A stretch of DNA of 64,000 bases from Histomonas meleagridis 2922-C6/04-290x. Lineage: Eukaryota; Protista; Parabasalia. The notes under the pieces are model-generated. The model was not told the DNA's origin, did not search any database, and was given only the letters and a program-made list of their open reading frames with translations. Positions 3,910-26,224 of the stretch are shown here, one piece after another (position 1 is the first letter of the stretch; every line of letters begins with the position of its first letter). The position numbers were made by a program, and so were the translations under genes. The stretch spans positions 222,093 to 286,092 of the forward strand of contig JAANOX010000232.1 in the NCBI GenBank assembly GCA_020184695.1, read 5' to 3'.

Positions 3910-5676
3910 ATGTGGACCATTTTCCCTATTTGTCTCATGTTTCTCATGTCCTCATGCCACTTTTGCAACAAATGTATTACTCCTCAAATTTCGTCCAATA
4001 ATTATTCATTTTTAAATGTTCAAAAAAACAAAACACATGTTTTTTTAATACATGATGAATACAACTGTCTTTATACAATAAGCCTTCATTGTCTAAATAA
4101 TGATTTTAGTGAAATTTCTTCCATTTTTTTAAATTTATCAAATAATTTTTATTATATAAAGACAAAAGTTCTTCACTTTTTACCATTAATTTGGCATCCG
4201 AACCCTTCGTTTTTACGCTGGTTGTTTCCTTCAAAATCTTGTATTTTTTCAGATCATACATATATATTTCATCGCAATAAAAATTTAGAAAATGGACCTC
4301 TCATCGGATGTTTAGTGGTCTTGTTCTTAACATTTATTCGAATATTTTCATTTTTCATAAAAAATGTTTCCAAATCCAAAACAAAAAATTTCCATGTTTT
4401 TATTTTTATTTTGTTTTCCTTAAATACATCGAGATGCTATGAAAATGGAACACTTTTAATCTATAATGAAAATGATTTCACAAATGAGTGTTCATCTTCA
4501 ACAATTTTTGTAATTGTTGGAGGTAACTTAAGTATTCCGAGTGGAGAATTTAGTGAATATCCACTTCTGGAAAATGTTTACATTGGCGATTCAATTACAT
4601 CTATTGGAGGTTATGCTTTTTGCAATTGCCCCAAATTGGGAAATGTTATCATTGGAAACAATGTTAAGGAAATAGGATCTTCAACATTCTCATTTTGCCC
4701 AAAGTTATTAAGCATCACAATTCCAGATTCAGTTACATCTATTGGAGGTTCTGCTTTTTGTAATTGTTCTGATTTGGAAACACTTATCATTGGAAAGAAT
4801 ATAAAGGAAATAGGAGACAGCGCATTTTCATTGTGCTCAAGTTTAAAATGTTTTTATTTTTATGGGACAAAAGAACCAATTATTGGGGATGGTGCTTTTT
4901 ATAATTTTTCAACAACAGTTATGGTATCACTGGAATATGTGGATGAAAATTTTGGACATTTATATATAACATCAGAAACAATTGAAGGGTGTTCACCAAT
5001 CGTTACAAACACATTTTCGAATTCAAATACGCTTACCAAATCAAACACATTTACTAATTCACATACGCTTACCAAATCAAACACATTTACTAATTCACAT
5101 ACGCTTACCAAATCAAACACATTTTCGAATTCGAACACGTTCACTAAGTCAAATACACATCATTCATCAAATGCTGTTACTGCTTCATTTCCAATTTTAA
5201 CAACTTTTTCGAATTCATTTACTTTAACGCATTCAATTTTGCGCACACAAACAATTACTATTTATTATATAACGCTCACAGATTCAACTTCAGTCTCTTT
5301 TATTAATTCGGCGTTTACATATTTTCACACGTCATTTGTTTATTATGAATACGTAGTAATTTCATATTCCACAGTTTATGTTTTTTATTCGAATTTTTAT
5401 ACATATTTTTATTTAAGTGATTTGCAACCAAATAATTCTAACACAACAATTATTATAATCGTAGTGTGTGTGATAATTGTAGTAATTGTTATTATATTTT
5501 TGTTAATTATATTGTTAATTAAATATAAGAAAACAATGAAAACAAAACAAGAATCAAGTAGTCAAAGTAACGCACCTGAAATTGATACAGTTGCGAACTG
5601 TTCAACAATATCTGATGTTAAAGAGGATCCATTCGCAGATGACTTTAAAGAAGAAAAGTTTATAAATCAATTATAA
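3910..5676 (+). CDS. BspA-like leucine-rich-repeat surface protein (LRR, S/T stalk, TM, cytoplasmic tail)
   Basis: TpLRR repeats (IGDSITSIGGYAFCNC, IPDSVTSIGGSAFCNC), T/S-rich stalk, I/V-rich TM helix, tail EDPFADDFKEEKF. The true start is probably the out-of-frame ATG at 4394 (see findings). Confidence 0.9.
   Translation: MWTIFPICLMFLMSSCHFCNKCITPQISSNNYSFLNVQKNKTHVFLIHDEYNCLYTISLHCLNNDFSEISSIFLNLSNNFYYIKTKVLHFLPLIWHPNPSFLRWLFPSKSCIFSDHTYIFHRNKNLENGPLIGCLVVLFLTFIRIFSFFIKNVSKSKTKNFHVFIFILFSLNTSRCYENGTLLIYNENDFTNECSSSTIFVIVGGNLSIPSGEFSEYPLLENVYIGDSITSIGGYAFCNCPKLGNVIIGNNVKEIGSSTFSFCPKLLSITIPDSVTSIGGSAFCNCSDLETLIIGKNIKEIGDSAFSLCSSLKCFYFYGTKEPIIGDGAFYNFSTTVMVSLEYVDENFGHLYITSETIEGCSPIVTNTFSNSNTLTKSNTFTNSHTLTKSNTFTNSHTLTKSNTFSNSNTFTKSNTHHSSNAVTASFPILTTFSNSFTLTHSILRTQTITIYYITLTDSTSVSFINSAFTYFHTSFVYYEYVVISYSTVYVFYSNFYTYFYLSDLQPNNSNTTIIIIVVCVIIVVIVIIFLLIILLIKYKKTMKTKQESSSQSNAPEIDTVANCSTISDVKEDPFADDFKEEKFINQL
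5029..5123 (+). repeat. Coding 36-bp tandem repeat (12-aa TLTKSNTFTNSH units) in the BspA stalk
   Basis: ACGCTTACCAAATCAAACACATT starts at 5029, 5065 and 5101. Confidence 0.9.
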
Positions 5677-6025
5677 TAAAAATAGTAATTTAGTAAATAT
5701 ATAAAATCGTAAATTTCCTTTTTTGATTTTTCATTTTACGCAAAATTGAAATAGAAAATTTTCTGATATTAAAATGTGAATTTATATAAAAGAATAATTT
5801 AGTCCAACTTAACGTAAAATTTAATACAAAGTTTAAAAAAATCTATTAAAAACATTCAACAGATCGTAAATTTCCTTTGAATGAGTGCTGTGTCTTTGAT
5901 GTGCCTATATGTCAATATGGTTTGGGAATCGTTTTGGTACAGAATTTATTCCTTTGATAAATACCGATTCAATGCAAAAAAATTGGCAATGAAATTTCAA
6001 TTGAACCAAATGACATTTTACCAGA

Positions 6026-9000
6026 ATGCAAGAATTGGTTGTAGATCGTACATACGATCTAAATGACCCACGTGCATTTATGCACCCTGACACCATGCGT
6101 GAGCGTGGCTTTGAAAATGGAAATATCTTGCGTTTGACTTCAAAATCAAATCACAATGCTCTTGTTTCAGTATATGGTCGAGATAATATAAGTGATCCCA
6201 GTAAAATTCAAATACCAAAGTATTTACGTCTCCAGCTTCATACATTTTTAGGTGATTCAATTCAGGTTTCTCAATACAATAATTGTGGTGAAGCCGAATC
6301 TGTAACATTATCTTTAATTGAAGACACAGCATTTGGAGTTACTGGTGATTTTACAGATGTTTTAACGGATGCGATTTCTAAATTCCCAATAATTTATACT
6401 GGACTTGTTATTCCAGTTTATGCCTACCAACGTGTTTTAGAGTTCAAAGTCACAGAATTTTCACCAAGTGATGCAGGTGCTGTTTATGTTCGAAATTCCA
6501 GAATTTTACATGTAACAGATTACTTTATAGATAGAGATGATTCTCCAAAAATGGACACTTTAACATTTGAAGATTTTGGAGGTTACAAAGATCAAATTAC
6601 ACAACTTCGAAAATCTATTGAACTTCCATTTTCTCAACCAAACTTCCAAACAAAGACAATTCTTATAAAAGCTTCGAATGGAATGGGTAAAACCATGTTA
6701 TCTAAAATCATACCCAATGAAACGCCGTCCAAATTTTTCTATATTCCTGGTCTTAATGTTATTTCACTTTCTCAAACAGAAATATCGTCCTACATTACCA
6801 ACATCATTCGGCAAAGTCAGAATAGTTTACCATCCATTATTTATTTTGATGATATTGATTGTTTTGTTTCAGATTATTTACTACGGCCAATTATTGATTC
6901 AATTTTTAAACGTCTCACATCAACGAATCAAATGTTATTTATTGCCACAGCAAAATCTGAAGACAATCTTCCAACCTTTAATGAAGTTATATCCTTTGAT
7001 AACCCTACAGAAATGGATCGATTATTAATATTACAATCTATTACACGTAAAATGTATATTCCACATCCAAGTACAATCTATGAAATTTCCGATCAATGTC
7101 AAAACATGAAACCATCGCAAATGTCATCGTTATGTTTAGACACGTTTTTAAACAAAATAGATCAAGTAATTAATGAATTTAATATTCTTGATCCAGTTAT
7201 AACAATTCGAACATTACAAAAACTTAAAGTTGGTAAAGATAAACCAAAGCCAGAAGAATTATTTAATAATAAATTTAATCGTAGTCCATTAGCACTTGAA
7301 AAGAATATTCCATTTGATGATGATTATGATTTACAATTTGGACGAATGGATGAAAACAATAAAAAGAAACATCGAAAGAAGATTAACACTACAAATAATT
7401 CATTAGATTTATTTAATGAATTTTCTAACTCACAAAATGAATTTGTTGATGATATATTTGGTGATAAACTTCATTCTAATGAAACTAGTAATGATCCATT
7501 TAGTGATTTACAAATTAATCAAGATCAAAATCATAATGACATTGATCCATTTGAACAATTTACACGTTCAAGTAACAAAGAAAATAATAACAACGAGAAT
7601 AATGCTGATGAAAATGATCCATTTAAAGAACTCAGCAAAACTAATGATGATAATGATATTGATCCATTTAAACAATTTGATCTTAAACAAACGAATGATG
7701 AAGATAATTCACAAGATATTGATGATCCATTTTTGAATTTATCTCCAACAAATAATAATAAAAGTAAAGAAGAAACTTCAAATAATAACAATGAAGTTAA
7801 TGATGATATCTTTAATGCATTTACTAAAAAAGATGAAACACAAAATATTGATCCATTTGCTAATGTAAAATTCGAAAATGTTAATACAACAAATCAAAGT
7901 AATATTGATCCATTTGATAACTTACAACTTATAAATAATTCACCACAACAAAATAATGTAAAATTCGATAACATTAATACTACAAATCAAAACAATGATC
8001 AATTTACTAATTTACAATTAGTAAATGATAAAGATAATGACCCGTTCCACTCAATCAATATGAAAAAAGATGCAAGTGATCATTCATTAAAATTCGATAA
8101 AGATTCAAATCCATTCGCAACTGTTTCTCCAAATATTAGTAATAAGAAAAAGGAAAATCCATTCGATAAAATTTCAAATAGTAATAAGCAAACAGCAGCA
8201 AATCCATTCACTACATTCAGTAAACAAGTTCCAGAAAACCAAAGTAAATTAAAAGACGCAAATCCATTCGCTTCAATACAAATTAAAGGTTTGGATAAGA
8301 AACAATCAAATGATCCATTCGCAAATGCAACTAAACAAACTAAAGATGATCCATTTGCAACTACGCCTAAAAAGAATGCACAAGATCCATTCGCAACTAC
8401 ACCTAAGCAAACTAAAGATCCTTTCGCTAATGTATCAAAGAAGAATACAAGTGATCCATTCGCAAGTGCACCTAAACCAACAAAAGATGATCCGTTCGCT
8501 AATGTTTCAAAGAAAAGTACAAATGATCCATTCGCTAATGCTACTAAGCAAACTAAAGATGACCCGTTCGCAAGCGCATCGAAAAAGAGTACACAAGATC
8601 CGTTTTCAAGCGCACCTAAGCCTTCGAATGATGATCCTTTTGCAAGCGTTTCTAAAAAGAATAATGATCCATTCGAATCAGCAAGTAAAAAGTCAAACGA
8701 CCCATTTGCAGCATTCAATCAAAAGAAGAGCACAAACGATGACCCGTTCGCAAGCGCATCCAAGCCTCCGAATGATGATCCATTTGCACCCACAGATGAT
8801 CCATTCGCAAGTGCGTCTAAGCCAACGAAAGATGATCCATTCGCATCAGCAAGCAAAAAGTCAAATGATCCATTCGCAAGTGCATCTAAAAAGAGCGAAC
8901 AAGATCCATTCGCAACCACGCCTAAGCCTTCTAATGATGATCCATTCGCATCAGCAAGCAAAAAGTCAAATGATCCATTCGCAAGTGCGTCTAAAAAGAG

Positions 9001-11269
9001 CGAACAAGATCCATTCGCAAGTGCGTCTAAGCCAACAAAAGATGATCCATTCGCAACTACGCCTAAGCCTTCTAATGATGATCCATTTGCATCAGCAAGC
9101 AAAAAGTCAAATGATCCATTTGCATCTCCTCCCAAAGATGATGGATATACATTTAAAGATCCATTCTCGTCACCGGATGCTCAAGATGATCCATTTGCAC
9201 CTCAGCAAAAGAGCAAAGGTCTGTTTGATGATTCTGATGAATCAAGTGATGACTCTTCAGAACATAATGAATCAAAAGATGATCCATTCGCAAATGTACC
9301 TAAAAGCTCCAACAATGATCCGTTCGCTGCACCAAAAGATGATCCATTTGCTTCTCCAAAAGATGATCCATTTGCAGTTAAAGATGCAGGCAATGATCCG
9401 TTCGCTGCGCCAACAGATGTCAAAGACGATCCATTTGCGCCTAAAGATTCTAAAAACGACCCATTCGCTGCAGGTAATGATCCGTTCTCAAGTGCACCTA
9501 AGAGCTCCACTAATGATCCGTTCGCTGCGCCAGCAGAAGTTAAAGACGATCCATTTGCACCTAAAGATGCAAACAATGATCCGTTCGCTGCACCTAAAGA
9601 AGATCCATTTATGCCTAAGCAAAAGAGCAAAAGTATGTTCGATGACTCTGACGAGTCAAGTGACGACAACAAGGCAAAAGAAGATTCTTCTGCATTGCCA
9701 AAACAAAAGAGCAAAGGCCTCTTCGATGACTCTGATGAATCAAGTGATAATGAGCCAAACAAAGACTTATTCGCATCACCGAAGCAAGAAGATCCGTTCA
9801 CAACGAAAGATCCATTCTCCGCTCAAGGAAAAGAAGATCCATTCGCATCGCCAAAAGATGCAAATAATGATCCATTTGCTGCTAATAACTCTAAAGAAGA
9901 TCCATTTGCATCACCTAAGCAAGAAGATCCATTTGCAATGAAAGATCCCTTTGCTGCTAATAACACTAAAGAAGATCCATTCGCATCGCCTAAAGATGCA
10001 AATAATGATCCATTCGCTGCTAACAACACTAAAGAAGATCCGTTTGCATCACCTAAACAAGAAGATCCGTTCGCAGCGAAAGATCCATTTGCAAATACTG
10101 ATCCGTTTTCAGCGCCTAAAGATGCGAAAGAGGATCCATTTTTGCCGAAGCAGAAGAGCAAAAGTCTCTTCGATGATTCCGATGAGTCAAGTGACGGCGC
10201 AGCACAAAATAAGTCCAAAGGCGGACTTTTCGGCGACGACCCATTTGCTGCGCCTAAGAAAAAGAGCAAAGGCTTGTTTGATGACTCTGATGAATCAAGC
10301 GATGAGCCAGCGCCGCATAACGAAGCAAACAATGATCCGTTCGCATTGCCTAAGCAAGAAGATCCATTTGCCGCAAAGCCACAAAATGATCCATTCGCCC
10401 AGTCCAATGATCCGTTTGCAGCTCCTAAACAAGAAGATCCATTCGCAAAGCCACAAAATGATCCATTCGCTGCACCTAAACAAACTGATCCGTTCGCATC
10501 AAAGCAAGAAGATCCATTTGCAGCTCCTAAACAAGAAGATCCGTTCGCTGCGCCTAAGCAAGATGAGAGCTTGCAGATCTCTAAGGAGGCATCTTCAGAT
10601 CGTTTCTCGTCTGCATCAGGTAAAAAGGCCAAGCGCGTTCGTAAGAAATCGCGGAAGAAGGATGATAAAGGAAAAGCGCCTCGTAAAGCAAGCGAAGAAA
10701 CAGGCGCGCAGCACACAAAGCGCCATGCCAAGAAGGAAGAAAAGAGCGCAGACTCAAAGACAAAACATCGAAAGAAAGAAAAGTCAAAGAAATTGGAAAC
10801 TAAATCAAAGCAAAGTGACAAAGCATCAAAATTACAGCCAGCAACTGAAGATCCATTTTCTTCTAAAACACAACCGGTAAACGAGGATCCATTCTCAGCT
10901 ACAATACAAAACACAAATGAAGACCCATTCGCTTCTAAGCCACAAACTACAAACGATGATCCATTTGCAAACAAAGATCCGTTTTCAACCGCCCAAAACG
11001 AGGATCCGTTTAGTTTCAGGGACCCGTTTTCGGCACCCGAAGTCAAAAATAACGGTTATGGGTTCAGTGACCCGTTTGGGGCACCCAATGAGGGGGACCA
11101 TTCTGCGTATGGAAGTACATTTGATGTTGTAAATCCATTTGATGTTATTGAAGAAGAAGAAAAACAACCACAAGTGGAGCAGCAACAAAATGAACCGGAA
11201 ACACAAGTTGTAAATGAAAAGGAAAAGAAAAAGAAAAAATCTCGAATTTCGAAATCAAAAAAGAAATGA
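6026..11269 (+). CDS. CDC48/p97-like protein: N domain plus degenerate D1 AAA domain fused to an about 1300-aa DPF/NPF-repeat tail
   Basis: Residues 1-403 align by eye with p97 N and D1 (KIQIPKYLRLQLHTFLGD, VLEFKV, TFEDFGGYKDQITQLRKSIELP, ASNGMGKT, IIYFDDID, lid SSLC). There is no D2. The tail has about 78 DPF and 5 NPF motifs by manual count. Confidence 0.85.
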   Translation: MQELVVDRTYDLNDPRAFMHPDTMRERGFENGNILRLTSKSNHNALVSVYGRDNISDPSKIQIPKYLRLQLHTFLGDSIQVSQYNNCGEAESVTLSLIEDTAFGVTGDFTDVLTDAISKFPIIYTGLVIPVYAYQRVLEFKVTEFSPSDAGAVYVRNSRILHVTDYFIDRDDSPKMDTLTFEDFGGYKDQITQLRKSIELPFSQPNFQTKTILIKASNGMGKTMLSKIIPNETPSKFFYIPGLNVISLSQTEISSYITNIIRQSQNSLPSIIYFDDIDCFVSDYLLRPIIDSIFKRLTSTNQMLFIATAKSEDNLPTFNEVISFDNPTEMDRLLILQSITRKMYIPHPSTIYEISDQCQNMKPSQMSSLCLDTFLNKIDQVINEFNILDPVITIRTLQKLKVGKDKPKPEELFNNKFNRSPLALEKNIPFDDDYDLQFGRMDENNKKKHRKKINTTNNSLDLFNEFSNSQNEFVDDIFGDKLHSNETSNDPFSDLQINQDQNHNDIDPFEQFTRSSNKENNNNENNADENDPFKELSKTNDDNDIDPFKQFDLKQTNDEDNSQDIDDPFLNLSPTNNNKSKEETSNNNNEVNDDIFNAFTKKDETQNIDPFANVKFENVNTTNQSNIDPFDNLQLINNSPQQNNVKFDNINTTNQNNDQFTNLQLVNDKDNDPFHSINMKKDASDHSLKFDKDSNPFATVSPNISNKKKENPFDKISNSNKQTAANPFTTFSKQVPENQSKLKDANPFASIQIKGLDKKQSNDPFANATKQTKDDPFATTPKKNAQDPFATTPKQTKDPFANVSKKNTSDPFASAPKPTKDDPFANVSKKSTNDPFANATKQTKDDPFASASKKSTQDPFSSAPKPSNDDPFASVSKKNNDPFESASKKSNDPFAAFNQKKSTNDDPFASASKPPNDDPFAPTDDPFASASKPTKDDPFASASKKSNDPFASASKKSEQDPFATTPKPSNDDPFASASKKSNDPFASASKKSEQDPFASASKPTKDDPFATTPKPSNDDPFASASKKSNDPFASPPKDDGYTFKDPFSSPDAQDDPFAPQQKSKGLFDDSDESSDDSSEHNESKDDPFANVPKSSNNDPFAAPKDDPFASPKDDPFAVKDAGNDPFAAPTDVKDDPFAPKDSKNDPFAAGNDPFSSAPKSSTNDPFAAPAEVKDDPFAPKDANNDPFAAPKEDPFMPKQKSKSMFDDSDESSDDNKAKEDSSALPKQKSKGLFDDSDESSDNEPNKDLFASPKQEDPFTTKDPFSAQGKEDPFASPKDANNDPFAANNSKEDPFASPKQEDPFAMKDPFAANNTKEDPFASPKDANNDPFAANNTKEDPFASPKQEDPFAAKDPFANTDPFSAPKDAKEDPFLPKQKSKSLFDDSDESSDGAAQNKSKGGLFGDDPFAAPKKKSKGLFDDSDESSDEPAPHNEANNDPFALPKQEDPFAAKPQNDPFAQSNDPFAAPKQEDPFAKPQNDPFAAPKQTDPFASKQEDPFAAPKQEDPFAAPKQDESLQISKEASSDRFSSASGKKAKRVRKKSRKKDDKGKAPRKASEETGAQHTKRHAKKEEKSADSKTKHRKKEKSKKLETKSKQSDKASKLQPATEDPFSSKTQPVNEDPFSATIQNTNEDPFASKPQTTNDDPFANKDPFSTAQNEDPFSFRDPFSAPEVKNNGYGFSDPFGAPNEGDHSAYGSTFDVVNPFDVIEEEEKQPQVEQQQNEPETQVVNEKEKKKKKSRISKSKKK
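7490..11140 (+). repeat. Coding low-complexity array of GATCCATT(C/T) (DPF) units with spacers of variable length
   Basis: Repeated GATCCATTCGC/GATCCGTTCGC, plus five FDDSDESSD blocks. Confidence 0.95.
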
Positions 11270-11443
11270 ATAATTTCTAAACATTTGGTATATTAAAAAT
11301 TATTTTGTGAAAGTTATAAAAGTTTTAGAAATAATATTTTGTATACTTTGATTGATTAAAAATATTAAAATTTAATAATAATATTTTTATTTATGTAGTT
11401 TATATACTTATTCAAATATTTATTGCATGTGCAAAAATAAATT

Positions 11444-12557
11444 TTAAATCTTAACGAAGGATTCGTTTTCTTTGAAGTCTTCTGCAAATGGATCTTCTTT
11501 AAGATGTGATATATTCATAGTAAAGTTATTTGAAATGTTATCACAATTATTATGAGTATATTCTTTTTCATTCATACTGTCATCTCTTCGTTTTTTATTT
11601 CGAATACGAAGAAGTATTATAATAACTATTGTAAGAATCACAATAATTATAAAGCCAACACAAATTCCAATAATAATATTAGAAATTTTAGTTTGTCCTT
11701 TATTTGTTTCATTATTATCTTGAATATTTATATAAAATCCTGAATGATATGAAATATATAATGAATATGTAATTATAGTATTTTCATAATAAAGAAAGTT
11801 CGTTTCAAAATATGAATATGTTGAACCAAAATATGAAAGAATGATTGTATTTGTGAAAACAGTATTCGGGATATTTGTTTTGGTGATTAAATGTGTGAAA
11901 AATATTGAATATGAATATGTATATGTTTCATCAAATTTTTTAGAAGATGTAAATGTATTTGAATGTGTGAATGTGTTTGAATTTGTAAATATATTTGAAT
12001 CTGAAAAAGTATTCGAATGTGTAGATGTGTGTGTTTGCCATGGATATTGTTCACATTCATCAATGGCTGTTCCAATTGATATATTAAGTACAAACCAAAT
12101 GTTGTACTTTGATATAAATCTGACGTCATAACATGATTTGTTGGAACATTCTCAAATGAATTCGAATTTATTGATGGTGATATATAACCTAAATAATATA
12201 TACATGTTAGATTTGTGCAATCTCTGAATGCATAAGTTCCAATTGATGTTATATTTGGCCCAATAATAATCATTTTTAATGATGAACATAAGCGAAAAGC
12301 ATTACCACTAATTGATGTAACTGAATCCGTAATAGTGATATTTATTAAAGATGAACATTGATAAAATGTATAACTTTCAATTGATGGACTAAACCTGAAA
12401 TTGTTACATTTCTTAATGATGAACAATATCTAAATGCATAACTTCTAATTGTTGTTACATTATTCCCAAAATTAATTGCTTTTAATTGAGAACATGATTG
12501 GAATGCATAAGTTCCAATTGATTTTCTACATACCATATATGATATTAAAAAATTCAT
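11444..12557 (-). pseudogene. Frameshifted, 5'-truncated BspA-like gene
   Basis: LRR pieces (SIGTYAFQSC, ITDSVTSISGNAFRLC) are split over ORFs 12345-12557 and 11887-12426. The stalk is in another frame, and the TM plus tail HLKEDPFAEDFKENESFVKI is in ORF 11444-11641. Confidence 0.8.
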
Positions 12558-13360: not shown

Positions 13361-14938
13361 TTAACTGTGCTCACAAAGTGATTTTCTTGATTTTTCTCGA
13401 ATTAAATCCACTATTTCTGTATGACCATTATAAGATGATAACATAAGTGCTGTCCAAAATAATTTAAATAAATTCCAAATATTATTTTGAAATATTAAAT
13501 GTTTAAAATAAATATTAAACAAAACAAATAAATACTTTTAGCATTAATATCAATTCCTTCTTGTTCAAGAAGTAATTTAACTATTTCTGTATAACCATTT
13601 TTTGAAGCATTTGTTAGTGCTAAAAATATTAAAAAAAAAATTTAAAAATTTTTATAAAACAATGAAATATTTTAATAAAAATCTAATGAAATAAGCAAAC
13701 AATCTTGCTAAAATCAATGTATCTATTGTTAATTAAATAGTTATAAAGTTCCATATTTCCAGAAAAACCCGAAAATTTTCAAAAAATCAATAGGAATATG
13801 ATTACTTTCGAGAAAATATTGAGTAATATATAAATTCCCTGTTATGATTGAAGCAATGAGAATATTTTCATTTATTTTCATTCCTTCTTTAAGTAAAAAT
13901 GATAAAAGTTCTTAATTATGATATAAAATGCAAAGTTTTCCTAATTCTTTTAAATTATTAATTTCTTTTAATGTATTATCATAAAAATAATGAAAGATAT
14001 CATTTCGATGAAATTTAATTGCTGCTTCATATACACCTTCAAATGTTAAATGATTTTGTTCACATAAATGAATGATTTCTTCATTTCCACCAGCAATTGC
14101 ATATTTACCTGCGTTTTCTAATTTTGCACCATTCATAAGTAAATATTTAAAACATTTAATAGAAGAAAAAAATGCTGCATAATCAATTAACGTAACATTT
14201 TCTTCATTAATAAATGAACATCTTTCATAAAGTGATGACTCAATCTTTTGATTAAAATCAAAATTTGTTTGTGATGATATTTCTTGAAGTTTTTCGATTT
14301 CATCATTTCGAATTATTTTTGCAATTTTATTCGGATTATGTCCTTCTTTAATTAACTTCTTATGAAGTTCCCAATCATTCTTTGAAAGTTCTTCATAATG
14401 TTCATTAATTTTATCGAAGAACCTATATTTTTCTTGACTTAAAATATCTTTTTTTATTTCATCTTTAAATTTTTGATTATAATTAATCATTTGTTGGATT
14501 TCTTCATTGGTCATATAATGTACAAAATATGAAATCTTATTATGTTTCAACAGAACATTTTTTTGTAGAAAATTATGTTCAATCATTGAGAAGAAAATAT
14601 GTCTCTTGTGTATGTCCATCAAGAAGCAAAAACTTAGTAAACACTTCAAATATTTTGTTTTTAACTTGTTTTGTTTCTTCAAATTGTTCAATTTCTTCTA
14701 GAAATTTAATATATATATCAAAATCTTTTTGTCTTGCTATAAATACAGAAAATATTATTTGACTAATCATTTAATTAAAAGATAATGGATGCTCATCATC
14801 AAATTTTATGATTATTAAACTTGATAATTTTTTAATATTTTCTCGATTCAATTCAAATATTATTTTGTTAATTAGTAGTAGTGTTTCCAATTTATCAGTA
14901 AATTCATCATTTTCATTTGTTGAAATCTCTTTTTCCAT
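13361..14938 (-). pseudogene. DUF3447/ankyrin-repeat protein, disrupted
   Basis: IIRNDEIEKLQ...TLIDYAAFFSSIKCFKYLLMN...AIAGGNEEIIHLC...AIKFHRNDIF is the DUF3447-ankyrin pattern. Downstream ankyrin repeats ASKNGYTEIVKLLLEQEGIDINAK and WTALMLSSYNGHTEIV follow. There are in-frame TAAs (near 14772 and at 13912), a frameshift near 14600 and AT-rich insertions. Confidence 0.75.
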
Positions 14939-20351: not shown

Positions 20352-21320
20352 TTAAAATATAGATCGAAGAAAAGATGTGAACAAACGATCGACCTTCCCG
20401 ATAAACTCAGAAAATACAAACTCTGATTTTGGTTCATTTTCTTCTATTTTACAATTTTCGAAAAGTTTGGAATGAAAGACAGGAACTTCATTCTTCTTTT
20501 GTGATTCATCATCAATGAAGTTTCTTTTAGGGTCATATCTTCCTTTGTAACAAACAACTGCATATCCAGAAATTATTTGAAATACTCGATTATCTAAATC
20601 GATGTTATTTTTCTCCTGATCAATGAAGCTGGAGTACTCAATAGAAATCCAGTTGCTATCTGAACGTGAAACTCTTGACAAATCACCAAATTTTGAAAAG
20701 AATTTGAGAGTTTCCTCGTAATACAAATCTTGGACACCAAATATTGTGTACCATCTGCTTGAGATGACAAGGTTAAATTGTAATACAGAGTAAGGATCTG
20801 ATTTCGAAAATGAAATAAGTGCTGATCTGATATCAGAAACAAAATGTACTGTAGGCTTCTGAATTGTTGAAGCATACTTGCCCTTGTGAAAAAGTAATGT
20901 TGTCCCTCGTTTTTTGATCTCATCGTCAGAATTTAATATCAGCTGATTTTCAGGAGAAAGAGACATAAATTTAACAGATATCCATTTTTCAAATGACGTT
21001 AGACATTTAGATATTTCACCATATTGTAAACAATGATTATATGCTTCTATTATTGAGAATGAAGAACTATCTGAAATCCATGTTAAAGTAAACCATTCAC
21101 CAGACTTTGATTTTGAAATTTCCTTTTGTTTTCCATATAGGCTATGTTCTGGATATGTTCCAATATAATCATATCCGTATTTTCCAAAAACTCGAGGTTC
21201 AGGAAGTGTTCTCAAATTACCACTGTGTGAAGAAGAAACAAGTTGCACTTCAACTGATTCGTAATCTCTAAAAAGTCTAGTCTTAATGAATTCGGTGTTT
21301 TCTGTTTCTTTAGAGACCAT
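20352..21320 (-). CDS. Putative Nup35/Nup53-type RRM (MPPN) protein with two RRM-like domains
   Basis: WYTIFGV...FSKFGDL...SNWISIEYSS resembles the Nup35 RRM (WVTVFGF...FAQYGNI...NWMHIRYQS). A second copy is WFTLTW...LQYGEI...KWISVKF. First in-frame ATG is 21320; the track starts at TTG 21377. Confidence 0.55.
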   Translation of the reverse strand: MVSKETENTEFIKTRLFRDYESVEVQLVSSSHSGNLRTLPEPRVFGKYGYDYIGTYPEHSLYGKQKEISKSKSGEWFTLTWISDSSSFSIIEAYNHCLQYGEISKCLTSFEKWISVKFMSLSPENQLILNSDDEIKKRGTTLLFHKGKYASTIQKPTVHFVSDIRSALISFSKSDPYSVLQFNLVISSRWYTIFGVQDLYYEETLKFFSKFGDLSRVSRSDSNWISIEYSSFIDQEKNNIDLDNRVFQIISGYAVVCYKGRYDPKRNFIDDESQKKNEVPVFHSKLFENCKIEENEPKSEFVFSEFIGKVDRLFTSFLRSIF

Positions 21321-21593
21321 TGGGCAGTTTACCCTTTTGGGCAAAATTAACGTACTTTCTTCTGTTCTTATTTTCAATATATAAATGGCCGATTAATTTG
21401 CTCATGTTTTTCCTTTTTCATTTATTAGAATAAAGCCAAAGTCTATGGTAATGGCTTCATCATCTTTTAATAAAAAGTTTAAACTTCAAATCATTAAATC
21501 AAATATGTAATCAGATTTCATTAGAAAACTTTTTAATGATTTCACACGAAACCAAAAAAACAAAAATTTCTTAATTTGATTCTTTAATGGAGT

Positions 21594-22826
21594 TCACATT
21601 GGTTGACAGCTTCCTTGATGTTGATATCCATCATCTTCGCCGTATGCCTCATGTCTTTGGCTTCTGCTTGACTTAGCATTTTCGAATTGTTTGATGTCTG
21701 AATCTTTCATCTTAACAACGAATACGTTTTCATCCTTCATATTAATTCCAGCTGTCTCATCTGGCACTGGCAAAGCTTTCATGAGTGCGCTTCTAAGCTC
21801 TGGTGTTATTTGATTTGGCTTTGGAAATTCGACTTCGAACTTGATGAAAAGTCGACCTTTCTCAAATTGATTGCCACGGATTGGCATACCTTCGCGGTCT
21901 ATAACCTTGACGGAATCTGGGATAATGATCTGTCCAGGAGTTGTTTCGACAATGACTTTACGACCATCTAAATGATTAATGACAAATTTAGCTCCAAGCA
22001 AAGCTTCACTAAGAGTGATTCTCTTAAGGGCAAGGAGATCGTCGTGGTTTCTAACGAATGTCTGATGTTGCTTTTGCTTAAGCTTAATGATAAGATCACC
22101 AGTATCAGCGCCTGGGGCTTCATCAGAACAACCTTGGAAGACGATGCGTTCACCATTCTCCATTCCTGGTTCGATATGAACGGTAACTTTCTTGGCTTCT
22201 TGTGTGATCTTCTTACCTTTACATGCGGTGCAACGATCTTTAGGATCAATGCTTTCACCTGTTCCATGACATGTTGGACATGGTGCAATTTGTTGTGAGA
22301 CCATAAAGCCCATTCTGGTAACTTGAACTTTTTGTCCTTTACCATCACAATCTGCACACTTCTTGGGTGACTTACCTTCAGCACAACCAGAGCCATTACA
22401 TTTCTTACAAAGAACATCACGATTGATCTTAAGAGTTACTTCACGACCATTATAAAGATCTTCGAGTGAAACACTAATAGTGTGTTCAATATCTTGTGTC
22501 CTAGCTTTACGTTTAGAGCGTCCACCTCCCATACCAAAGTTTCCAAAGCCAAAAAGATGTGAAAGAATGTCATCCATTCCACTACCGCCGGCTCCTTCAC
22601 GAAGACCTTCAGCGCCATATTGATCATATATTTGACGCTTTTGAGGATCTTTTAAGATATCATAAGCTTCGTTAACTTGCTGGAACTTTTCGGTTGCATT
22701 TGGGTCATCTCGATTACGATCGGGGTGAAGTTGCATTGCCTTTTTTTTATATGCCCTTCTGAGGTCAGCTTCGCTTGCATCTGGTGAAACACCAAGTAAA
22801 TCATAAAGCTTCGTGTCGACAACCAT
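21594..22826 (-). CDS. DNAJA: Type I DnaJ/Hsp40 chaperone (DNAJA/Ydj1-like)
   Basis: MVVDTKLYDLLGV, HPD motif, G/F region, four CxxCxGxG-type zinc motifs, C-terminal CaaX-like CQPM. Start set at ATG 22826. Confidence 0.96.
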   Translation of the reverse strand: MVVDTKLYDLLGVSPDASEADLRRAYKKKAMQLHPDRNRDDPNATEKFQQVNEAYDILKDPQKRQIYDQYGAEGLREGAGGSGMDDILSHLFGFGNFGMGGGRSKRKARTQDIEHTISVSLEDLYNGREVTLKINRDVLCKKCNGSGCAEGKSPKKCADCDGKGQKVQVTRMGFMVSQQIAPCPTCHGTGESIDPKDRCTACKGKKITQEAKKVTVHIEPGMENGERIVFQGCSDEAPGADTGDLIIKLKQKQHQTFVRNHDDLLALKRITLSEALLGAKFVINHLDGRKVIVETTPGQIIIPDSVKVIDREGMPIRGNQFEKGRLFIKFEVEFPKPNQITPELRSALMKALPVPDETAGINMKDENVFVVKMKDSDIKQFENAKSSRSQRHEAYGEDDGYQHQGSCQPM

Positions 22827-22964
22827 CCTTAAAAATAAAGGCTTTGGCGGTTGTATACAATTTAAGTGGCCAAACAACCATAATTGGGGTGCCCCAAGAA
22901 AATTTGGCATTTCCATACAAAATCTGGGGTGCCCTAAGAATTCCATGTTTTTCATTTCATTTAA
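22827..22964. promoter_or_regulatory. 138-bp bidirectional promoter between DnaJ and YJU2
   Basis: Divergent ATGs at 22826 and 22965. Inr-like TCATTTCATTT at 22952, CCTTT (minus strand) at 22837-22841, and the direct repeat TGGGGTGCCCYAAGAA at 22885 and 22925. Confidence 0.65.
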
Positions 22965-23651
22965 ATGGGTGAAAGAAAGCCTGCATGCCATTATATTCCA
23001 CCAGACTTCGACCCAAAGCGTCCCGCAAGAAGATGTAAACCTCAAAATGGTCAGCATCAAGTTCGTTTCATGTTACCAATGTCACTTCAATGTAAAAATT
23101 GCGGAGATTACATGTTTTTAGGTACAAAAGTTAATTGTAGAAAAGAACTTTGTTATGATGAGTTTTATTTGGGTATTAACGTTTATAGGATTTATATGCA
23201 CTGTAAATCTTGTTATGCGGAAATTACTTTGAAAACTGATCCTAAAAATTGCGATTATATAGTTGAGCAAGGTGCAACAAGACACTTTGAACCTTGGAGA
23301 GATTTTTATATTCAACAAGCTATGGATGAAAAAACTAAAATGCTTGGAAACAAAATTCAACAAGTAGAAGAAAGTACAGTTGATACTCAAAGAGAAATGG
23401 ATCAGTTAAGAGAATTAGAAAGATTAAGAGCCGTTAGCAATAAGCAAAATAAAACAAATATAGAAAAAATTATCGCAAAAGAAGAGAAACAAGACGTGTT
23501 AACAGATGAAGACAAGAAAAAAATCGAAAACTTCGAAGAAGATCAAAAGAAATTAAGAAAAGAAAGGCCGACCATTGGATTATTTGGAAGAAGTAGATTT
23601 GGTGGTAATAGTGGCGGCTTTTTCAAGTTTGGCACTGATCCTGAAATATGA
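22965..23651 (+). CDS. YJU2: Splicing factor YJU2/CWC16/CCDC94
   Basis: MGERK...HYIPPDFDP, VRFMLPMSLQCKNCG, YLGINVYRIYMHCKSC, TDPKNCDY...GATR. Confidence 0.93.
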   Translation: MGERKPACHYIPPDFDPKRPARRCKPQNGQHQVRFMLPMSLQCKNCGDYMFLGTKVNCRKELCYDEFYLGINVYRIYMHCKSCYAEITLKTDPKNCDYIVEQGATRHFEPWRDFYIQQAMDEKTKMLGNKIQQVEESTVDTQREMDQLRELERLRAVSNKQNKTNIEKIIAKEEKQDVLTDEDKKKIENFEEDQKKLRKERPTIGLFGRSRFGGNSGGFFKFGTDPEI

Positions 23652-23836: not shown

Positions 23837-26224
23837 ATGGAAGAAAAACAAACTTTTCCTCACCAACATCTTTTTCCAAATATTACTGAAGAACAAAAAC
23901 AAACATTGATTGATTATATTCCAGATGTGTTTTATGAGAATGATAAAGATTTTGATCCTATTGATTTTTCTTTATCTCTTTTACCTGATGCCGACAATCC
24001 TGACTTTAATAAAGAACTTGACAAGCTTTCCAATGGACAAATGGATTCTCTTGATATTGTTTCTCGAAATCTTAACCAAAATGTACTTGAAAATTATACC
24101 GAAGTTATTCGAGCAATGACACTTATCTCAGATCTTAATAATCATCTTAATGTTAGTGCCCAAAATATTTCACAAGCACGACAAATTCTTAGTAATACTG
24201 ATAGAGAAATATGCGAACATCCTGACAAATTCTTTCGGCAGGTTACCAAACAACAGAACCTTGACAAGGTACTTGGGTTACTTAATGAAATCCAAACCAT
24301 TTCTAAAGGATATGAAGATCTCTCCGAAGCACATAAAAATCATGATTATGTCACAGCATTAGAATTATGTTCCAAACCATCAGACCTCAACAGCAACATT
24401 CGACAACTTAATTGTATATCCGGTTTAGTTTCTAATCTACAAAATATGAAAGAAAAAGTTGTCTCAATTATGGATGACTCATTACGAGAACAAATTGTAC
24501 GCTTCGAACGCGATGTTTACCGAAACTTATTACGTGCGTATGAATCATTAGGCAAACTCCAAGTTGTACCCATTAAATTACAAGAAGCGTTTGTCACAAA
24601 GCTTACGACAGAAAATGATTCATTGGTCAATAATAATGCTGACTTCAAAACGTTGGCACGTTACAAACAGTTATTGCAACGTGTTATAGATAACAATTAT
24701 TCTATTCTTAACACTCATTTACAAATCATTAATTGGCATCGATCAACCAATGAATTTGAAAGTATTCGAAAGCCAATTGAAGATATTGCGAAAATTTTAT
24801 GGGATTCGGCTGAAAATTATGTAACAAATATCATAATTAAAGCACCTGCTGATAAACTTGGGTTTGAAGAATTCGATCGAATGTTAAAACTTACGTCATC
24901 ATTTATCCAATTTGGTTCAACAGTTGTTGATTTACCAGGTCAACAACTAACAAACGCCGTTAACAATCTGACAAATAAATATTTCAAATTATTCCAGAAA
25001 AGTGCTCTCGAAACTGCACACGAAAATATCGAGAACGATACGTGGAATTCAATACCTTCGACAAACGAATTAGAACGATCAATATTAACGTTGTCCATAC
25101 CTATCAAGGAATCAAATGATTCTAATGATGTCGCTAATATTACAATACCTTCAGCATTCCCTATCGACTTACAAAAGATGACAATTTCATGTTCAGCAAT
25201 TATTAAATTATTACATCAATATTTATCAATGATGAAACTTGTTCCGACACTCGCGACGGATTGCTTTAAAGGAATGAAAGAACTAATCGAGTATTATTCA
25301 TTTTCACTTTTATATATTGTCACAAAGAATTTGAATTTGAAACCATTTGATATCAATAATAACCAAATTAACATATTTAACCATAACTTAATCCTAATGA
25401 AAATCGAAGAATCGCAATGTTTAATACGTATAATTCAACATATTCAAGAATCGCAAATTAAATTACCATTAAATCTAACAAATAGTATTAACAACTTTGA
25501 CAACAATATTAAGTTTATCAATGACATAGTATCAATATCTTCCGATATTAAGATCATTGGTTGGTATTTATTATCTATTCGAACAATTTTCGAAGAATCT
25601 TTGCCAGAAAACTCGCTTGGACAGTTGCGTAGGTTCTTCAATGATGTTGTTAATATCTTTTTAATGCATTTTCCTTCATTTTGTTTCCAATATATTACAC
25701 CAAATTTGGTACATTTAGGTGAATTTGAACAACAAGTCAAACTTGTCAAATGGAATATTAATGAGGCTCAAGTTGAACCTCATTATTTCACTAACGTTTG
25801 GAAGGAAGCTGCTAAAAACATTAATGTAATTATTAACAAGTTGGAATCGATTGATCAAGAATATAAAGATGAATTATGGAAAGGGTTTTGGTGTTATAGT
25901 AACTTCATTTTAATCAATGGATACTCAGTCCAAAAATGTACAGCAGAAGGAAGAACTTCAATGCTATCGGACTTCAGAAATATGTCACACGATTTGATTG
26001 AATTCACAAACAAAAGAATTCAATTCGACACAAATTGGGTGGCATCGTTTGTGCAGTCATTTTTCTTGGGGGTACCCGAATTCAAAAAGTGGGCAAGTGA
26101 AAATTACAAGAGATACACATGTAACAATATTATGGCGGTAGTGGAAACAGGTTTGTCTGATGATATAAACAGACAAGCAAAGAAGGAGTTAAGACTGTTC
26201 GTACAGGAGTTGTATAACTCATAA
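23837..26224 (+). CDS. VPS50: Syndetin/VPS50 (EARP complex subunit)
   Basis: Vps54_N-like N-terminus (LDIVSRNLNQNVLENY). C-terminal LINGYSVQKCTAEGRTSMLSDF matches syndetin-C (LVEGY..VKKCSNEGRALMQLDF). Confidence 0.8.
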   Translation: MEEKQTFPHQHLFPNITEEQKQTLIDYIPDVFYENDKDFDPIDFSLSLLPDADNPDFNKELDKLSNGQMDSLDIVSRNLNQNVLENYTEVIRAMTLISDLNNHLNVSAQNISQARQILSNTDREICEHPDKFFRQVTKQQNLDKVLGLLNEIQTISKGYEDLSEAHKNHDYVTALELCSKPSDLNSNIRQLNCISGLVSNLQNMKEKVVSIMDDSLREQIVRFERDVYRNLLRAYESLGKLQVVPIKLQEAFVTKLTTENDSLVNNNADFKTLARYKQLLQRVIDNNYSILNTHLQIINWHRSTNEFESIRKPIEDIAKILWDSAENYVTNIIIKAPADKLGFEEFDRMLKLTSSFIQFGSTVVDLPGQQLTNAVNNLTNKYFKLFQKSALETAHENIENDTWNSIPSTNELERSILTLSIPIKESNDSNDVANITIPSAFPIDLQKMTISCSAIIKLLHQYLSMMKLVPTLATDCFKGMKELIEYYSFSLLYIVTKNLNLKPFDINNNQINIFNHNLILMKIEESQCLIRIIQHIQESQIKLPLNLTNSINNFDNNIKFINDIVSISSDIKIIGWYLLSIRTIFEESLPENSLGQLRRFFNDVVNIFLMHFPSFCFQYITPNLVHLGEFEQQVKLVKWNINEAQVEPHYFTNVWKEAAKNINVIINKLESIDQEYKDELWKGFWCYSNFILINGYSVQKCTAEGRTSMLSDFRNMSHDLIEFTNKRIQFDTNWVASFVQSFFLGVPEFKKWASENYKRYTCNNIMAVVETGLSDDINRQAKKELRLFVQELYNS

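What the first reader, a model, noticed from the sequence alone, without database searches (positions are those of the whole stretch)
6026..11269. CDC48/p97 N-D1 module fused to a giant DPF/NPF array instead of D2: candidate novel endocytic scaffold
Seen: residues 1-403 are collinear with p97 N plus the whole D1, including the lid. Walker A is ASNGMGKT, Walker B is DD not DE, sensor-1 N is A (IATAK), and the arginine-finger RFGR is missing. D2 is replaced by about 1300 disordered residues with about 78 DPF and 5 NPF motifs (manual count) and basic K/R patches. Established: p97 D1 drives hexamerisation and the N domain binds UBX/UBXL cofactors; DPF binds AP-2 alpha-ear (Eps15) and NPF binds EH domains. 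Inference: a probably ATPase-dead ring displaying several hundred adaptor-binding motifs, a multivalent coat-nucleation hub that may link ubiquitin cofactors to clathrin/AP trafficking or co-assemble with true p97. I know no characterised protein with this architecture.
Basis: partly seen in the sequence, partly recalled or inferred. Interest (0 to 1): 0.85.

Follow-up and report, generated by a model that had tools for sequence, protein, structure and literature searches.

The report
D2-less CDC48 paralogue with giant DPF tail
This is a real, transcribed gene for a catalytically degenerate copy of the front half of the CDC48/p97 ATPase, fused to a 1,340-residue disordered tail with 78 DPF motifs of the kind that bind clathrin adaptors. 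It belongs to an uncharacterised protein family found so far only in trichomonad-type protists.

Summary
ORF 6026-11269 (+) encodes 1,747 aa. Residues 1-405 match p97/CDC48 N-D1 (PDB phmmer E 1e-38; AF2 pLDDT 91; Foldseek TM 0.80-0.86 to p97 N-D1). The 1,342-aa tail has exactly 78 DPF and 5 NPF, against 1.6 DPF expected from shuffles.

RNA contigs from four runs bridge the N-D1/tail junction without mismatch or splice joint.

The gene is not a one-off. An exhaustive HMMER search found about 38 clusters of single-AAA N-D1 proteins with DPF/NPF tails. They sit on one side of a 100%-supported branch against two-ring CDC48/VAT proteins. Every named member is parabasalid: Trichomonas vaginalis, Tritrichomonas foetus (three paralogues) and Histomonas (two). 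All carry generic names, and I found no paper on them.

Across the family the P-loop is kept. Walker B is DD instead of DE, and sensor-1 Asn and pore loop 1 are lost. This looks like a nucleotide-binding, non-hydrolysing, non-threading module.

The DPF peptide is under selection (11 synonymous codon versions, few near-misses). The nearest sequences to the tail in 5.8 billion proteins are fish epsins.

Best reading: an oligomeric hub for adaptor appendages. That function is inferred, not shown. The link to UBX cofactors is doubtful.

The parts
6026..11269 (+). Complete intron-less CDS, 1,747 aa plus stop
   Evidence: ORF list and translation. RNA contigs 6041-8860 and 9091-11299 in four runs show no joints.
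6026..6520 (+). CDC48-type N domain (residues 1-165: double-psi barrel plus beta-clam)
   Evidence: Pfam CDC48_N at 3.7e-8. AF2 model with beta-strands 2-163 and pLDDT around 90-97. Foldseek matches to p97 N-D1 structures over the full length.
6521..7240 (+). N-D1 linker, D1 AAA alpha/beta core and helical lid (residues 166-405). It ends where the p97 D1-D2 linker would begin.
   Evidence: PDB phmmer alignment 3-405, Pfam AAA at 5e-9, AF2 and Foldseek.
6671..6694 (+). Walker A / P-loop ASNGMGKT (residues 216-223). It fits [AG]xxxxGK[ST].
   Evidence: G219, G221 and K222 are invariant in the 36-sequence alignment. Family table.
6761..6787 (+). Position of pore loop 1. The canonical K-aromatic/M-x-G-[DE]-S-E is replaced by SLSQTEIS.
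   Evidence: Family versus canonical alignment.
6836..6859 (+). Walker B IIYFDDID (residues 271-278). The catalytic Glu is replaced by Asp.
   Evidence: DD in 28 of 32 family members, DE in all 6 two-ring controls.
6938..6988 (+). Sensor-1 region (FIATAK, Asn lost) and the second region of homology, with the arginine-finger segment deleted (NLPT-FNEV).
   Evidence: Most relatives keep one Arg (xRF or RRL). This protein keeps none.
7241..8275 (+). N/D/K-rich low-complexity linker with sparse motifs (8 DPF, 4 NPF; residues 406-750)
8312..10546 (+). Dense DPF array: 62 DPF at 6-15-residue spacing (residues 763-1507), built from 24-141-nt tandem units
   Evidence: Motif positions. TRF periods of 24-141 nt at 61-88% matches. 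Synonymous codon diversity of DPF.
9209..10303 (+). Five copies of a second repeat, (P)KQKSKG[L/M]FDDSDESSD, at 9209-9250, 9617-9664, 9701-9748, 10148-10195 and 10256-10303. They interrupt the DPF blocks.
   Evidence: Not found in 31 relatives. Function unexplained.
10616..10822 (+). Strongly basic patch (residues 1531-1599, K/R/H-rich)
   Evidence: Relatives have comparable internal K/R/H patches.
10850..11077 (+). Terminal cluster of 8 DPF (residues 1609-1684), including two FxDPF forms
11126..11266 (+). Last NPF (VVNPFDV), an acidic/Gln-rich stretch and the polybasic C-terminus ...KKKKKSRISKSKKK
   Evidence: At least 11 of 31 relatives end in DPFAxx[KR][KR]-COOH.

Best explanation
The gene encodes a member of a parabasalid-specific family of CDC48/p97 paralogues. 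These proteins kept the N domain and the D1 ring domain, lost D2, and carry instead a long disordered tail of [D/N]PF[A/G/S] motifs ending in basic residues. Shown: the N-D1 module folds like p97 N-D1 and keeps a P-loop, but it lacks the Walker-B glutamate, the sensor-1 asparagine, the substrate-gripping pore loop and, in this protein, both arginine fingers. It therefore probably binds nucleotide but neither hydrolyses it efficiently nor threads substrates. Inferred: like p97 N-D1 or NSF-D2, the module serves as a static oligomerisation (probably hexamerisation) platform. The tails then display tens to hundreds of DPF/NPF motifs per particle (78 + 5 per chain here). These would bind the appendage ('ear') domains of the expanded trichomonad AP adaptor complexes and/or EH-domain proteins with high avidity. 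The basic patches and polybasic C-terminus would help hold the particle on acidic membranes. The protein would thus act as a coat-nucleating or clustering hub, a functional analogue of Eps15/Ede1 or epsin tails built on an AAA+ ring instead of a coiled coil or an ENTH domain.
For: Architecture. Fold: AF2 pLDDT 91 and pTM 0.86; Foldseek top 50 are all p97/CDC48, including N-D1 hexamer crystal entries, with TM 0.80-0.86 for 49 of them and 0.54 for one open-state chain. Transcription across the junction: a 2.8-kb RNA contig spans 6041-8860 with 0 mismatches in X1, X2 and X4 (a 2,775-nt contig 6053-8827 in X3), with zero depth at 5700-5896 in all four runs and downstream of the stop in two, and no joints. 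Family: 38 single-AAA rows on one side of an SH-aLRT 100 branch against two-ring proteins. The query is sister to a 1,772-aa, 55-DPF protein and groups with T. foetus TRFO_35526. Catalytic pattern is family-wide: GK[ST] in 32/32, Walker B DD in 28/32, sensor-1 Asn lost in 31/32, pore loop lost in 32/32. Selection on the motif: 78 DPF use 11 codon combinations (TTC 40 / TTT 38; CCA 53 / CCG 22), with only 12 one-residue near-misses, 5 of which are NPF. In subgroups 2 and 3, 22-94% of tail Phe lies in [DN]PF (57% or more in every member of the query's subgroup), and the next residue is A/G/S in 88% of motifs. Repeat units differ between lineages, which points to independent expansions. Convergence with a true endocytic adaptor: most of the best matches to a 500-aa tail segment (26 of 39, including the top 18) are teleost epsin-1-like ENTH proteins with 16-35 DPF in near-identical 'APKDDPF' units. 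DPF arrays of Eps15 bind AP-2 and FCHo/SGIP1 muHD (PMC4731787, PMC4921775, PMC2132690), and an EH domain can bind DPF (PMC2238750). Adaptin families are expanded in trichomonads (PMC6701047). T. vaginalis also has a canonical Cdc48 (PMC5070193), so this family is an addition, not a replacement.
Against: No binding, localisation or oligomerisation data exist for any member. The subunit-interface arginine region is degenerate, and deleted in this protein, so ring assembly is not assured. I did not verify that parabasalid adaptin ears keep a DPF-binding platform or that EH-domain proteins are present. The internal basic patch would also fit a nuclear localisation signal. The T. vaginalis tail scores sub-threshold against Pfam Nucleoporin_FG (26.9 bits against 32.2). 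Word depth over the 3' half of the gene is 2-12 times that of the 5' half, so an additional tail-only transcript cannot be excluded.
Confidence: 0.5

Rival explanations
1. CDC48 modulator. The N-D1 module co-assembles into, or caps, hexamers of the canonical CDC48, or it competes for N-domain cofactors. The DPF tail would then only target segregase activity to coated membranes (or inhibit it there), much as auxilin's DPF/clathrin-binding tail brings Hsc70 to coats.
For: CDC48/p97 is the closest homologue over N and D1. The N domain is under family-wide constraint, e.g. the conserved VIPVYALNRVIEFKV block. A canonical Cdc48 coexists in T. vaginalis (PMC5070193).
Against: Identity to canonical CDC48 is only about 22%, and the family is separated from it by a long, fully supported branch. 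The arginine-finger and interface segment is altered. p97 Y110, a key UBX/UBXL contact (PMC5389986), aligns with Glu89 at a position not conserved in the family.
Confidence: 0.15
2. An active, if slow, AAA ATPase that remodels or uncoats vesicle coats, recruited by its own DPF tail.
For: The P-loop is invariant and most relatives keep one SRH arginine. Asp at the Walker-B position can in principle support residual hydrolysis (general knowledge, not tested here).
Against: Walker-B Glu, sensor-1 Asn and pore loop 1 are missing across the family. This protein has no arginine finger at all. It also lacks D2, the main motor domain of p97.
Confidence: 0.1
3. The tail is a cohesive Phe-motif disordered region with a non-endocytic role, such as a nucleoporin-like barrier, a nuclear condensate or a Golgi/ER matrix. 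The basic patch would act as a nuclear localisation signal.
For: Sub-threshold Nucleoporin_FG match in the T. vaginalis tail. One weak tail hit carries a Nucleoporin_FG Pfam domain. The K/R patch is NLS-like.
Against: FG is not the conserved unit. Only 3% of tail Phe is followed by Gly in this protein, while 76% sits in [DN]PF. The spacers are highly charged. The best database matches are epsins.
Confidence: 0.1
4. Assembly or gene-model artefact: two genes, or a collapsed or expanded repeat, read as a single ORF.
For: Short-read RNA contigs break inside the repeat at 8860-9091, so no single record spans the whole ORF.
Against: The N-D1/tail junction (about 7240) is bridged by mismatch-free contigs in four runs. 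Small contigs tile most of the break in run X3. The same architecture recurs in more than 30 independent proteins, including a 1,772-aa one.
Confidence: 0.03

Closest known systems
CDC48 / p97 / VCP (type II AAA+ segregase), specifically its N-D1 fragment
   Same: Same N domain plus D1 alpha/beta core plus lid, collinear over about 400 residues (E 1e-38, TM 0.80-0.86). The p97 N-D1 fragment alone crystallises as a hexamer (PDB titles).
   Different: No D2 and no C-terminal Tyr tail. Walker B is DD, sensor-1 Asn and pore loop are lost, and the arginine fingers are deleted. Identity is about 22%. One of two key UBX-contact tyrosines is replaced (PMC5389986). A 1,342-aa motif tail is added.
Parabasalid orthologues and paralogues: T. 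vaginalis XP_001304745 (A2FTG5), T. foetus TRFO_35526 / TRFO_18081 / TRFO_06469, Histomonas KAH0793759 / KAH0788329
   Same: Same architecture and the same degenerate catalytic pattern, with DPF/NPF tails and basic ends.
   Different: Only 24-33% identity in N-D1. They carry 0-45 DPF against 78 here. Many end in DPFAP[RK]KK-COOH, which this protein lacks. This protein alone has the five KSKGLFDDSDESSD boxes. All are annotated only as hypothetical, AAA or cdc48.
Eps15 / Eps15R / Ede1 (endocytic pioneer scaffolds)
   Same: An oligomerising module plus a disordered array of DPF motifs that binds AP-2 appendages and muHD domains (PMC4731787, PMC4921775, PMC2132690).
   Different: Eps15 has EH domains, a coiled coil, UIMs and 15 DPF. 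This protein has none of those domains and five times as many motifs. There is no homology.
Epsin (ENTH domain plus DPW/DPF plus NPF tail), especially teleost epsin-1-like proteins
   Same: The tail unit is nearly identical (APKDDPF...). These are the best sequence matches to the tail (E 2e-21).
   Different: The membrane-binding ENTH domain is replaced here by an AAA+ N-D1 module. The similarity is convergent low-complexity, not descent.
NSF D2 domain (nucleotide-binding, non-hydrolysing oligomerisation ring)
   Same: Precedent within the Cdc48 family for an AAA ring used structurally for nucleotide-dependent hexamerisation (PMC5070193).
   Different: NSF-D2 works in cis with an active D1. 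Here no active ring is present in the polypeptide.

Membership tests
CDC48/p97 (type II AAA+, Cdc48 family) | N domain with double-psi barrel and beta-clam subdomains | tested here: met
   Pfam CDC48_N at 3.7e-8, slightly below the gathering score. AF2 plus Foldseek give full-length matches to p97 N-D1.
CDC48/p97 (type II AAA+, Cdc48 family) | Two tandem AAA domains (D1 and D2) | tested here: not met
   Only one AAA stretch found by Pfam at E up to 1, by phmmer and by the family HMM. The tail has no domain.
CDC48/p97 (type II AAA+, Cdc48 family) | Catalytic set: Walker A GK[ST], Walker B hhhhDE, sensor-1 Asn, SRH arginine fingers | tested here: not met
   Walker A is present. Walker B is DD, sensor-1 is Ala/Thr, and the Arg-finger segment is deleted.
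CDC48/p97 (type II AAA+, Cdc48 family) | Substrate-engaging pore loop 1 | tested here: not met
   The K-[M/F/W/Y]-x-G-[DE]-S-E motif is absent in all 32 family members.
CDC48/p97 (type II AAA+, Cdc48 family) | Hexameric ring assembly | not testable with these tools
   Only monomer prediction is available. It needs AlphaFold-Multimer, SEC-MALS or EM.
CDC48/p97 (type II AAA+, Cdc48 family) | UBX/UBXL/VIM-binding cleft residues of the N domain | tested here: inconclusive
   p97 Y110 aligns with E89 (a variable position in the family) and Y143 aligns with F120 (conserved Phe). Residue roles are taken from PMC5389986.
Parabasalid single-ring N-D1 / DPF-tail family (unnamed, defined here) | CDC48_N plus one AAA with Walker B DD, no D2, and a disordered [DN]PF[AGS] tail with a basic end; falls in the single-ring clade | tested here: met
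   The query is sister to P0157 (SH-aLRT 94) on the single-AAA side of the SH-aLRT 100 branch.
Eps15/Pan1/Ede1 scaffolds | EH domains and a central coiled coil | tested here: not met
   No EH or other domain by Pfam in this protein or in 8 relatives.
Eps15/Pan1/Ede1 scaffolds | Arrayed DPF motifs in a disordered region that bind AP-2 alpha/beta2 appendages | tested here: inconclusive
   The array is present and under selection. Binding is not testable here.
Epsin | N-terminal ENTH domain | tested here: not met
   Pfam shows no ENTH. The similarity is confined to the repeat tail.
FG nucleoporins | FG dipeptide repeats (FG, GLFG, FxFG) as the conserved unit | tested here: not met
   3 FG among 109 tail Phe. 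FG frequency varies from 0 to 72% across the family, while [DN]PF is the shared unit.

The most novel reading that the evidence does not exclude
Parabasalids have turned a duplicated CDC48 N-D1 ring into a static, nucleotide-locked hexameric hub. It would present hundreds of adaptor-binding DPF/NPF motifs (up to about 500 per particle for this protein) and so nucleate or cluster clathrin/AP coats. This would be an AAA+-based replacement, or supplement, for the coiled-coil Eps15/Ede1 class of endocytic pioneers. Three paralogous subgroups could serve different coats.
Probability: 0.35. Interest if true: 0.8.

Novelty: new variant of a known kind. Interest (0 to 1): 0.62.

Why it matters
If the reading holds, it shows a new way to build a multivalent coat-assembly scaffold: an inactivated AAA+ ring as the oligomerisation core. 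It would add a lineage-specific component to the unusually expanded trafficking machinery of trichomonads, which include human and veterinary parasites. It is also a clean natural example of pseudo-enzyme evolution within the CDC48 family. Motif valency ranges from about 3 to 83 motifs per tail in the two DPF-rich subgroups (fewer in the third), so the system could test how valency tunes adaptor clustering or condensate formation. The family is easily testable in T. vaginalis and T. foetus, where orthologues and transfection methods exist.

Tried and rejected
1. A word-indexed homologue search restricted to long proteins, using the N-D1 region, found nothing. The exhaustive HMMER search was needed.
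2. The ESM Atlas look-alike search returned only generic AAA clusters and gave no taxonomic insight.
3. Synteny: the nearest relative's contig (L001) shares no neighbours with this window.
4. Earlier scan notes hold nothing on this locus or family.
5. Literature searches by accession, by 'DPF' plus Trichomonas, and by Cdc48 plus DPF plus AP-2 found no paper on the family. The T. vaginalis genome paper could not be opened.
6. Clathrin boxes, W-box, WxxF, gamma-ear acidic-Phe, YxxPhi, SHP and VIM motifs were sought in the tail. None was found apart from 3 FxDxF and 4 D[LI]F.
7. The KSKGLFDDSDESSD box was sought in 31 relatives and is absent, so it is lineage-specific and unexplained.
8. The overlapping ORFs in other frames and on the other strand within 8080-11046 are by-products of the repeat and were dismissed.
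9. The second AAA hit in the window (41200-42672, minus strand) is TRIP13-like, not a paralogue.
Full report
**1. Observation**

The window has one uninterrupted ORF at 6026-11269 on the + strand, 1,747 codons. A script count gives exactly 78 DPF and 5 NPF. All lie after residue 489. In 1,000 shuffles of the 1,342-residue tail, DPF occurs 1.6 times on average and 8 times at most.

The tail is D/K/P/S/N/A/F-rich, with only about 6% I/L/V/M/W/Y/C and no Pfam domain. Tandem Repeats Finder shows units of 24-141 nt at 61-88% matches between 8300 and 10990. G+C rises from about 0.25-0.33 to 0.37-0.45 over the array.

The other ORFs listed inside 8080-11046, in other frames and on the other strand, are by-products of the repeat.

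**2. The N-terminal module**

- phmmer against all PDB sequences aligns residues 3-405 collinearly with Arabidopsis CDC48A 4-424 and human p97 26-450 (E 1e-38 to 1e-36).
- Pfam gives AAA (5e-9) and CDC48_N (3.7e-8, just under the gathering score), and only one AAA stretch even at E up to 1.
- An AlphaFold2 model of residues 1-425, built with a 36-sequence alignment, has mean pLDDT 91 and pTM 0.86.
- The 50 best Foldseek matches in the PDB are all p97/CDC48. They include N-D1 fragments that crystallise as hexamers. TM-scores are 0.80-0.86 over about 428-450 aligned columns for 49 of them, with one open-state chain at 0.54.

The folded part ends at ...LQKLKVGK (397-404), where the p97 D1-D2 linker would start.

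**3. Catalytic site**

The site was aligned with 31 relatives and 6 two-ring proteins.

| Feature | This protein | Family | Two-ring controls |
|---|---|---|---|
| Walker A | ASNGMGKT (216-223), fits [AG]xxxxGK[ST] | GK[ST] in all 32; G219, G221, K222 invariant | present |
| Walker B | FDDID | DD in 28 of 32 | DE in all 6 |
| Sensor-1 Asn | absent | absent in 31 of 32 | Asn in 5 of 6 |
| Pore loop 1, K-[aromatic/M]-x-G-[DE]-S-E | absent | absent in all 32 | present |
| SRH arginines | whole segment deleted, no Arg left | most keep one (xRF or RRL) | both present |

My reading is that nucleotide binding is retained under selection. Efficient hydrolysis and substrate threading were given up at the origin of the family. 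This is inference from motif knowledge, not an assay.

**4. Transcription**

Four runs labelled as RNA hold the locus. Laid on 5700-11600, three runs give a contig spanning about 6041/6060-8860 (2,801-2,820 nt, X1, X2 and X4) and X3 one of 2,775 nt spanning 6053-8827, all with 0 mismatches. It crosses the N-D1/tail boundary at about 7240 by 1.6 kb. A second contig covers 9091-11173/11299.

Depth is zero at 5700-5896 in all four runs and in the 11216-11412 bin in two (the X3 and X4 contigs run on to 11299), which argues for RNA rather than contaminating DNA. There are no joints, so there are no introns. The break at 8860-9091 falls in the most repetitive part and is largely tiled by short contigs in run X3.

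Two differences from the genome (8884 A>G, 10966 T>C) are both synonymous. One lies in a DPF Phe codon.

Caveat: word depth over the 3' contig is 2-12 times that of the 5' contig. This could be 3' bias, repeat k-mers or an extra 3' isoform. No single record spans the whole ORF.

**5. It is a family**

Scoring N-D1 against 1.84 billion cluster representatives gave 27 hits below 1e-30. Most of the best 37 have a single AAA stretch at their N-terminus and tails of very different lengths (448-1,454 aa). Most of those tails are rich in DPF and/or NPF, for example 45, 42, 36, 25, 24 and 19 DPF.

A 90% cluster-mate of the second hit is 1,772 aa with 55 DPF and 6 NPF.

Every named member is parabasalid, and all carry only generic names:

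- T. vaginalis XP_001304745 / A2FTG5 ('ATPase, AAA family protein', 1,041 aa)
- T. foetus TRFO_35526, TRFO_18081 and TRFO_06469 (hypothetical proteins)
- Histomonas meleagridis KAH0793759 and KAH0788329 (one named 'cell division cycle protein 48')

A maximum-likelihood tree of 75 N-D1 segments puts all 38 rows of this single-AAA group on one side of an SH-aLRT 100 branch. All 28 two-ring proteins lie on the other side, together with 9 single-AAA rows that have no DPF or NPF motifs.

Inside the family there are three subgroups, and T. foetus has one gene in each. The paralogy is therefore old. The query is sister to the 1,772-aa protein (SH-aLRT 94, 33% identity) and groups with TRFO_35526.

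Eight full-length relatives show no further Pfam domain in their tails. At least 11 of 31 relatives end in ...DPFAxx[KR][KR]-COOH, most often DPFAP[RK]KK. The query instead ends NPF, then an acidic/Gln stretch, then KKKKKSRISKSKKK.

The Cdc48-family survey of Kienle et al. lists Cdc48, NSF, Spaf, Spaf-like and NVL for T. vaginalis and does not mention this group (PMC5070193). No paper was found by accession or by topic.

**6. The motif array is selected, and what it resembles**

The 78 DPF are written with 11 codon combinations (Phe TTC 40 / TTT 38; Pro CCA 53 / CCG 22 / other 3; Asp GAT 69 / GAC 9). Only 12 one-residue near-misses exist in the tail, and 5 of them are NPF. Synonymous change has therefore accumulated while the peptide is held.

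Across subgroups 2 and 3, 22-94% of all tail Phe lies in [DN]PF (57-87% in the query's subgroup). The next residue is A, G or S in 88% of 519 motifs. FG is not conserved (3% of tail Phe here, 72% in T. vaginalis), which argues against an FG-nucleoporin reading. Repeat units differ between lineages (PKDDPFA here, SSDPFGAP in T. vaginalis, PAAADPFA in another), so the arrays expanded independently around the same core.

A 500-residue piece of the tail was searched against 5.8 billion proteins. Most of the best matches (26 of 39, including the top 18; E 2e-21 down to 2e-4) were teleost epsin-1-like ENTH proteins. Those tails carry 16-35 DPF in 'APKDDPF' units almost identical to those here. This is convergence with a bona fide clathrin-adaptor-binding protein, not homology.

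Published work provides the background:

- Eps15's DPF array binds AP-2 and the muHD of FCHo/SGIP1 (PMC2132690, PMC4921775, PMC4731787).
- An EH domain can bind DPF (PMC2238750).
- Adaptin and other trafficking families are expanded in trichomonads (PMC6701047).

**7. Most likely mechanism**

Shown: a transcribed, conserved, D2-less CDC48 paralogue with a P-loop but without the hydrolysis and threading residues, joined to a selected [DN]PF[AGS] array with basic patches.

Inferred: N-D1 acts as a nucleotide-stabilised oligomerisation platform, as p97 N-D1 and NSF-D2 do. The tails then give very high avidity for adaptor appendage or EH domains. The basic segments favour acidic membranes. Together this would make a coat-nucleation or clustering hub. 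I put this at about 0.5.

Rivals:

- A CDC48 modulator or targeting subunit (0.15).
- A slow but active remodelling ATPase (0.1).
- A non-endocytic cohesive disordered region, or a nuclear role (0.1).
- An artefact (0.03).

p97 Y110 and Y143 are described as key for UBX/UBXL binding (PMC5389986). Y110 aligns with Glu89 at a family-variable position, and Y143 aligns with a conserved Phe. The N domain is nonetheless clearly constrained in a family-specific way, for example the VIPVYALNRVIEFKV block, so it probably binds something.

**8. Unexplained**

Five copies of (P)KQKSKG[L/M]FDDSDESSD punctuate the array and are absent from 31 relatives. They look like basic/Phe/acidic-Ser boxes with possible CK2-type phosphorylation sites. 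That is my own knowledge, not a test, and no known motif pattern I scanned for fits them.

**9. Novelty and verdict**

Both modules are known kinds. Their combination, and the use of an inactivated CDC48 N-D1 as the folded core of a DPF scaffold, is not described in the literature I could search. The sequences exist in databases only under generic names.

I rate it a new variant of a known kind. The structural and evolutionary facts are solid. The function is plausible but unproven.

Noticed in passing
window 9209-10303 (five sites): A second repeat, (P)KQKSKG[L/M]FDDSDESSD, occurs five times between DPF blocks. It is specific to this protein (absent in 31 relatives) and fits none of the trafficking motifs I scanned for.
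   Followed up: partly
relatives P0001, P0004, P0012, P0014, P0030 and others (C-termini): At least 11 of 31 relatives end in a near-identical ...DPFAxx[KR][KR]-COOH peptide, most often DPFAP[RK]KK. This suggests a conserved terminal recognition or membrane-binding element. The window's protein ends with a longer polybasic run instead.
   Followed up: partly
proteins P0174-P0195 (teleost epsin-1-like, ENTH): Fish epsin-1-like proteins carry 16-35 DPF in 'APKDDPF' repeats almost identical to the units here. This is a striking convergent expansion in a bona fide endocytic adaptor.
   Followed up: partly
window 6041-8860 versus 9091-11299 (RNA contigs): Assembler word depth is 2-12 times higher over the 3' half of the gene than over the 5' half in all four runs. 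This could be 3' bias, repeat k-mers or an additional 3' transcript.
   Followed up: no
window 41200-42672 (-): A TRIP13/Pch2-like AAA+ ATPase gene (Pfam AAA 6.6e-28, AAA_lid_TRIP13_C 1.3e-19). It is unrelated to the N-D1 family.
   Followed up: partly
window 3910-5676 (+) and 11887-12426 (-): BspA-type leucine-rich-repeat genes flank the locus. The upstream one has a weak match to a TMEM154 profile near its C-terminus (E 8e-5, below the curated cutoff). Together with a DUF3447 gene at 13912-14691 (-), this is typical of trichomonad genomes.
   Followed up: partly
window 23837-26224 (+), 21594-23060 (-), 20352-21377 (-): A Vps54/syndetin-like GARP/EARP subunit, a type I DnaJ and a Nup35-RRM protein lie downstream. 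The first is another trafficking gene, but nothing links it to the finding.
   Followed up: no
window 6009-6026: An out-of-frame ATG lies 17 nt upstream of the start codon, within ...ATGACATTTTACCAGAATG. The CATTTT resembles a trichomonad initiator element, so transcription may start between the two ATGs. RNA contigs begin at 6041-6060.
   Followed up: no
same genome, other pieces (earlier notes s1-309504 etc.): Earlier first-stage notes on this genome report ankyrin genes apparently interrupted by 17-nt inserts. This is unrelated to the present locus and was not examined.
   Followed up: no
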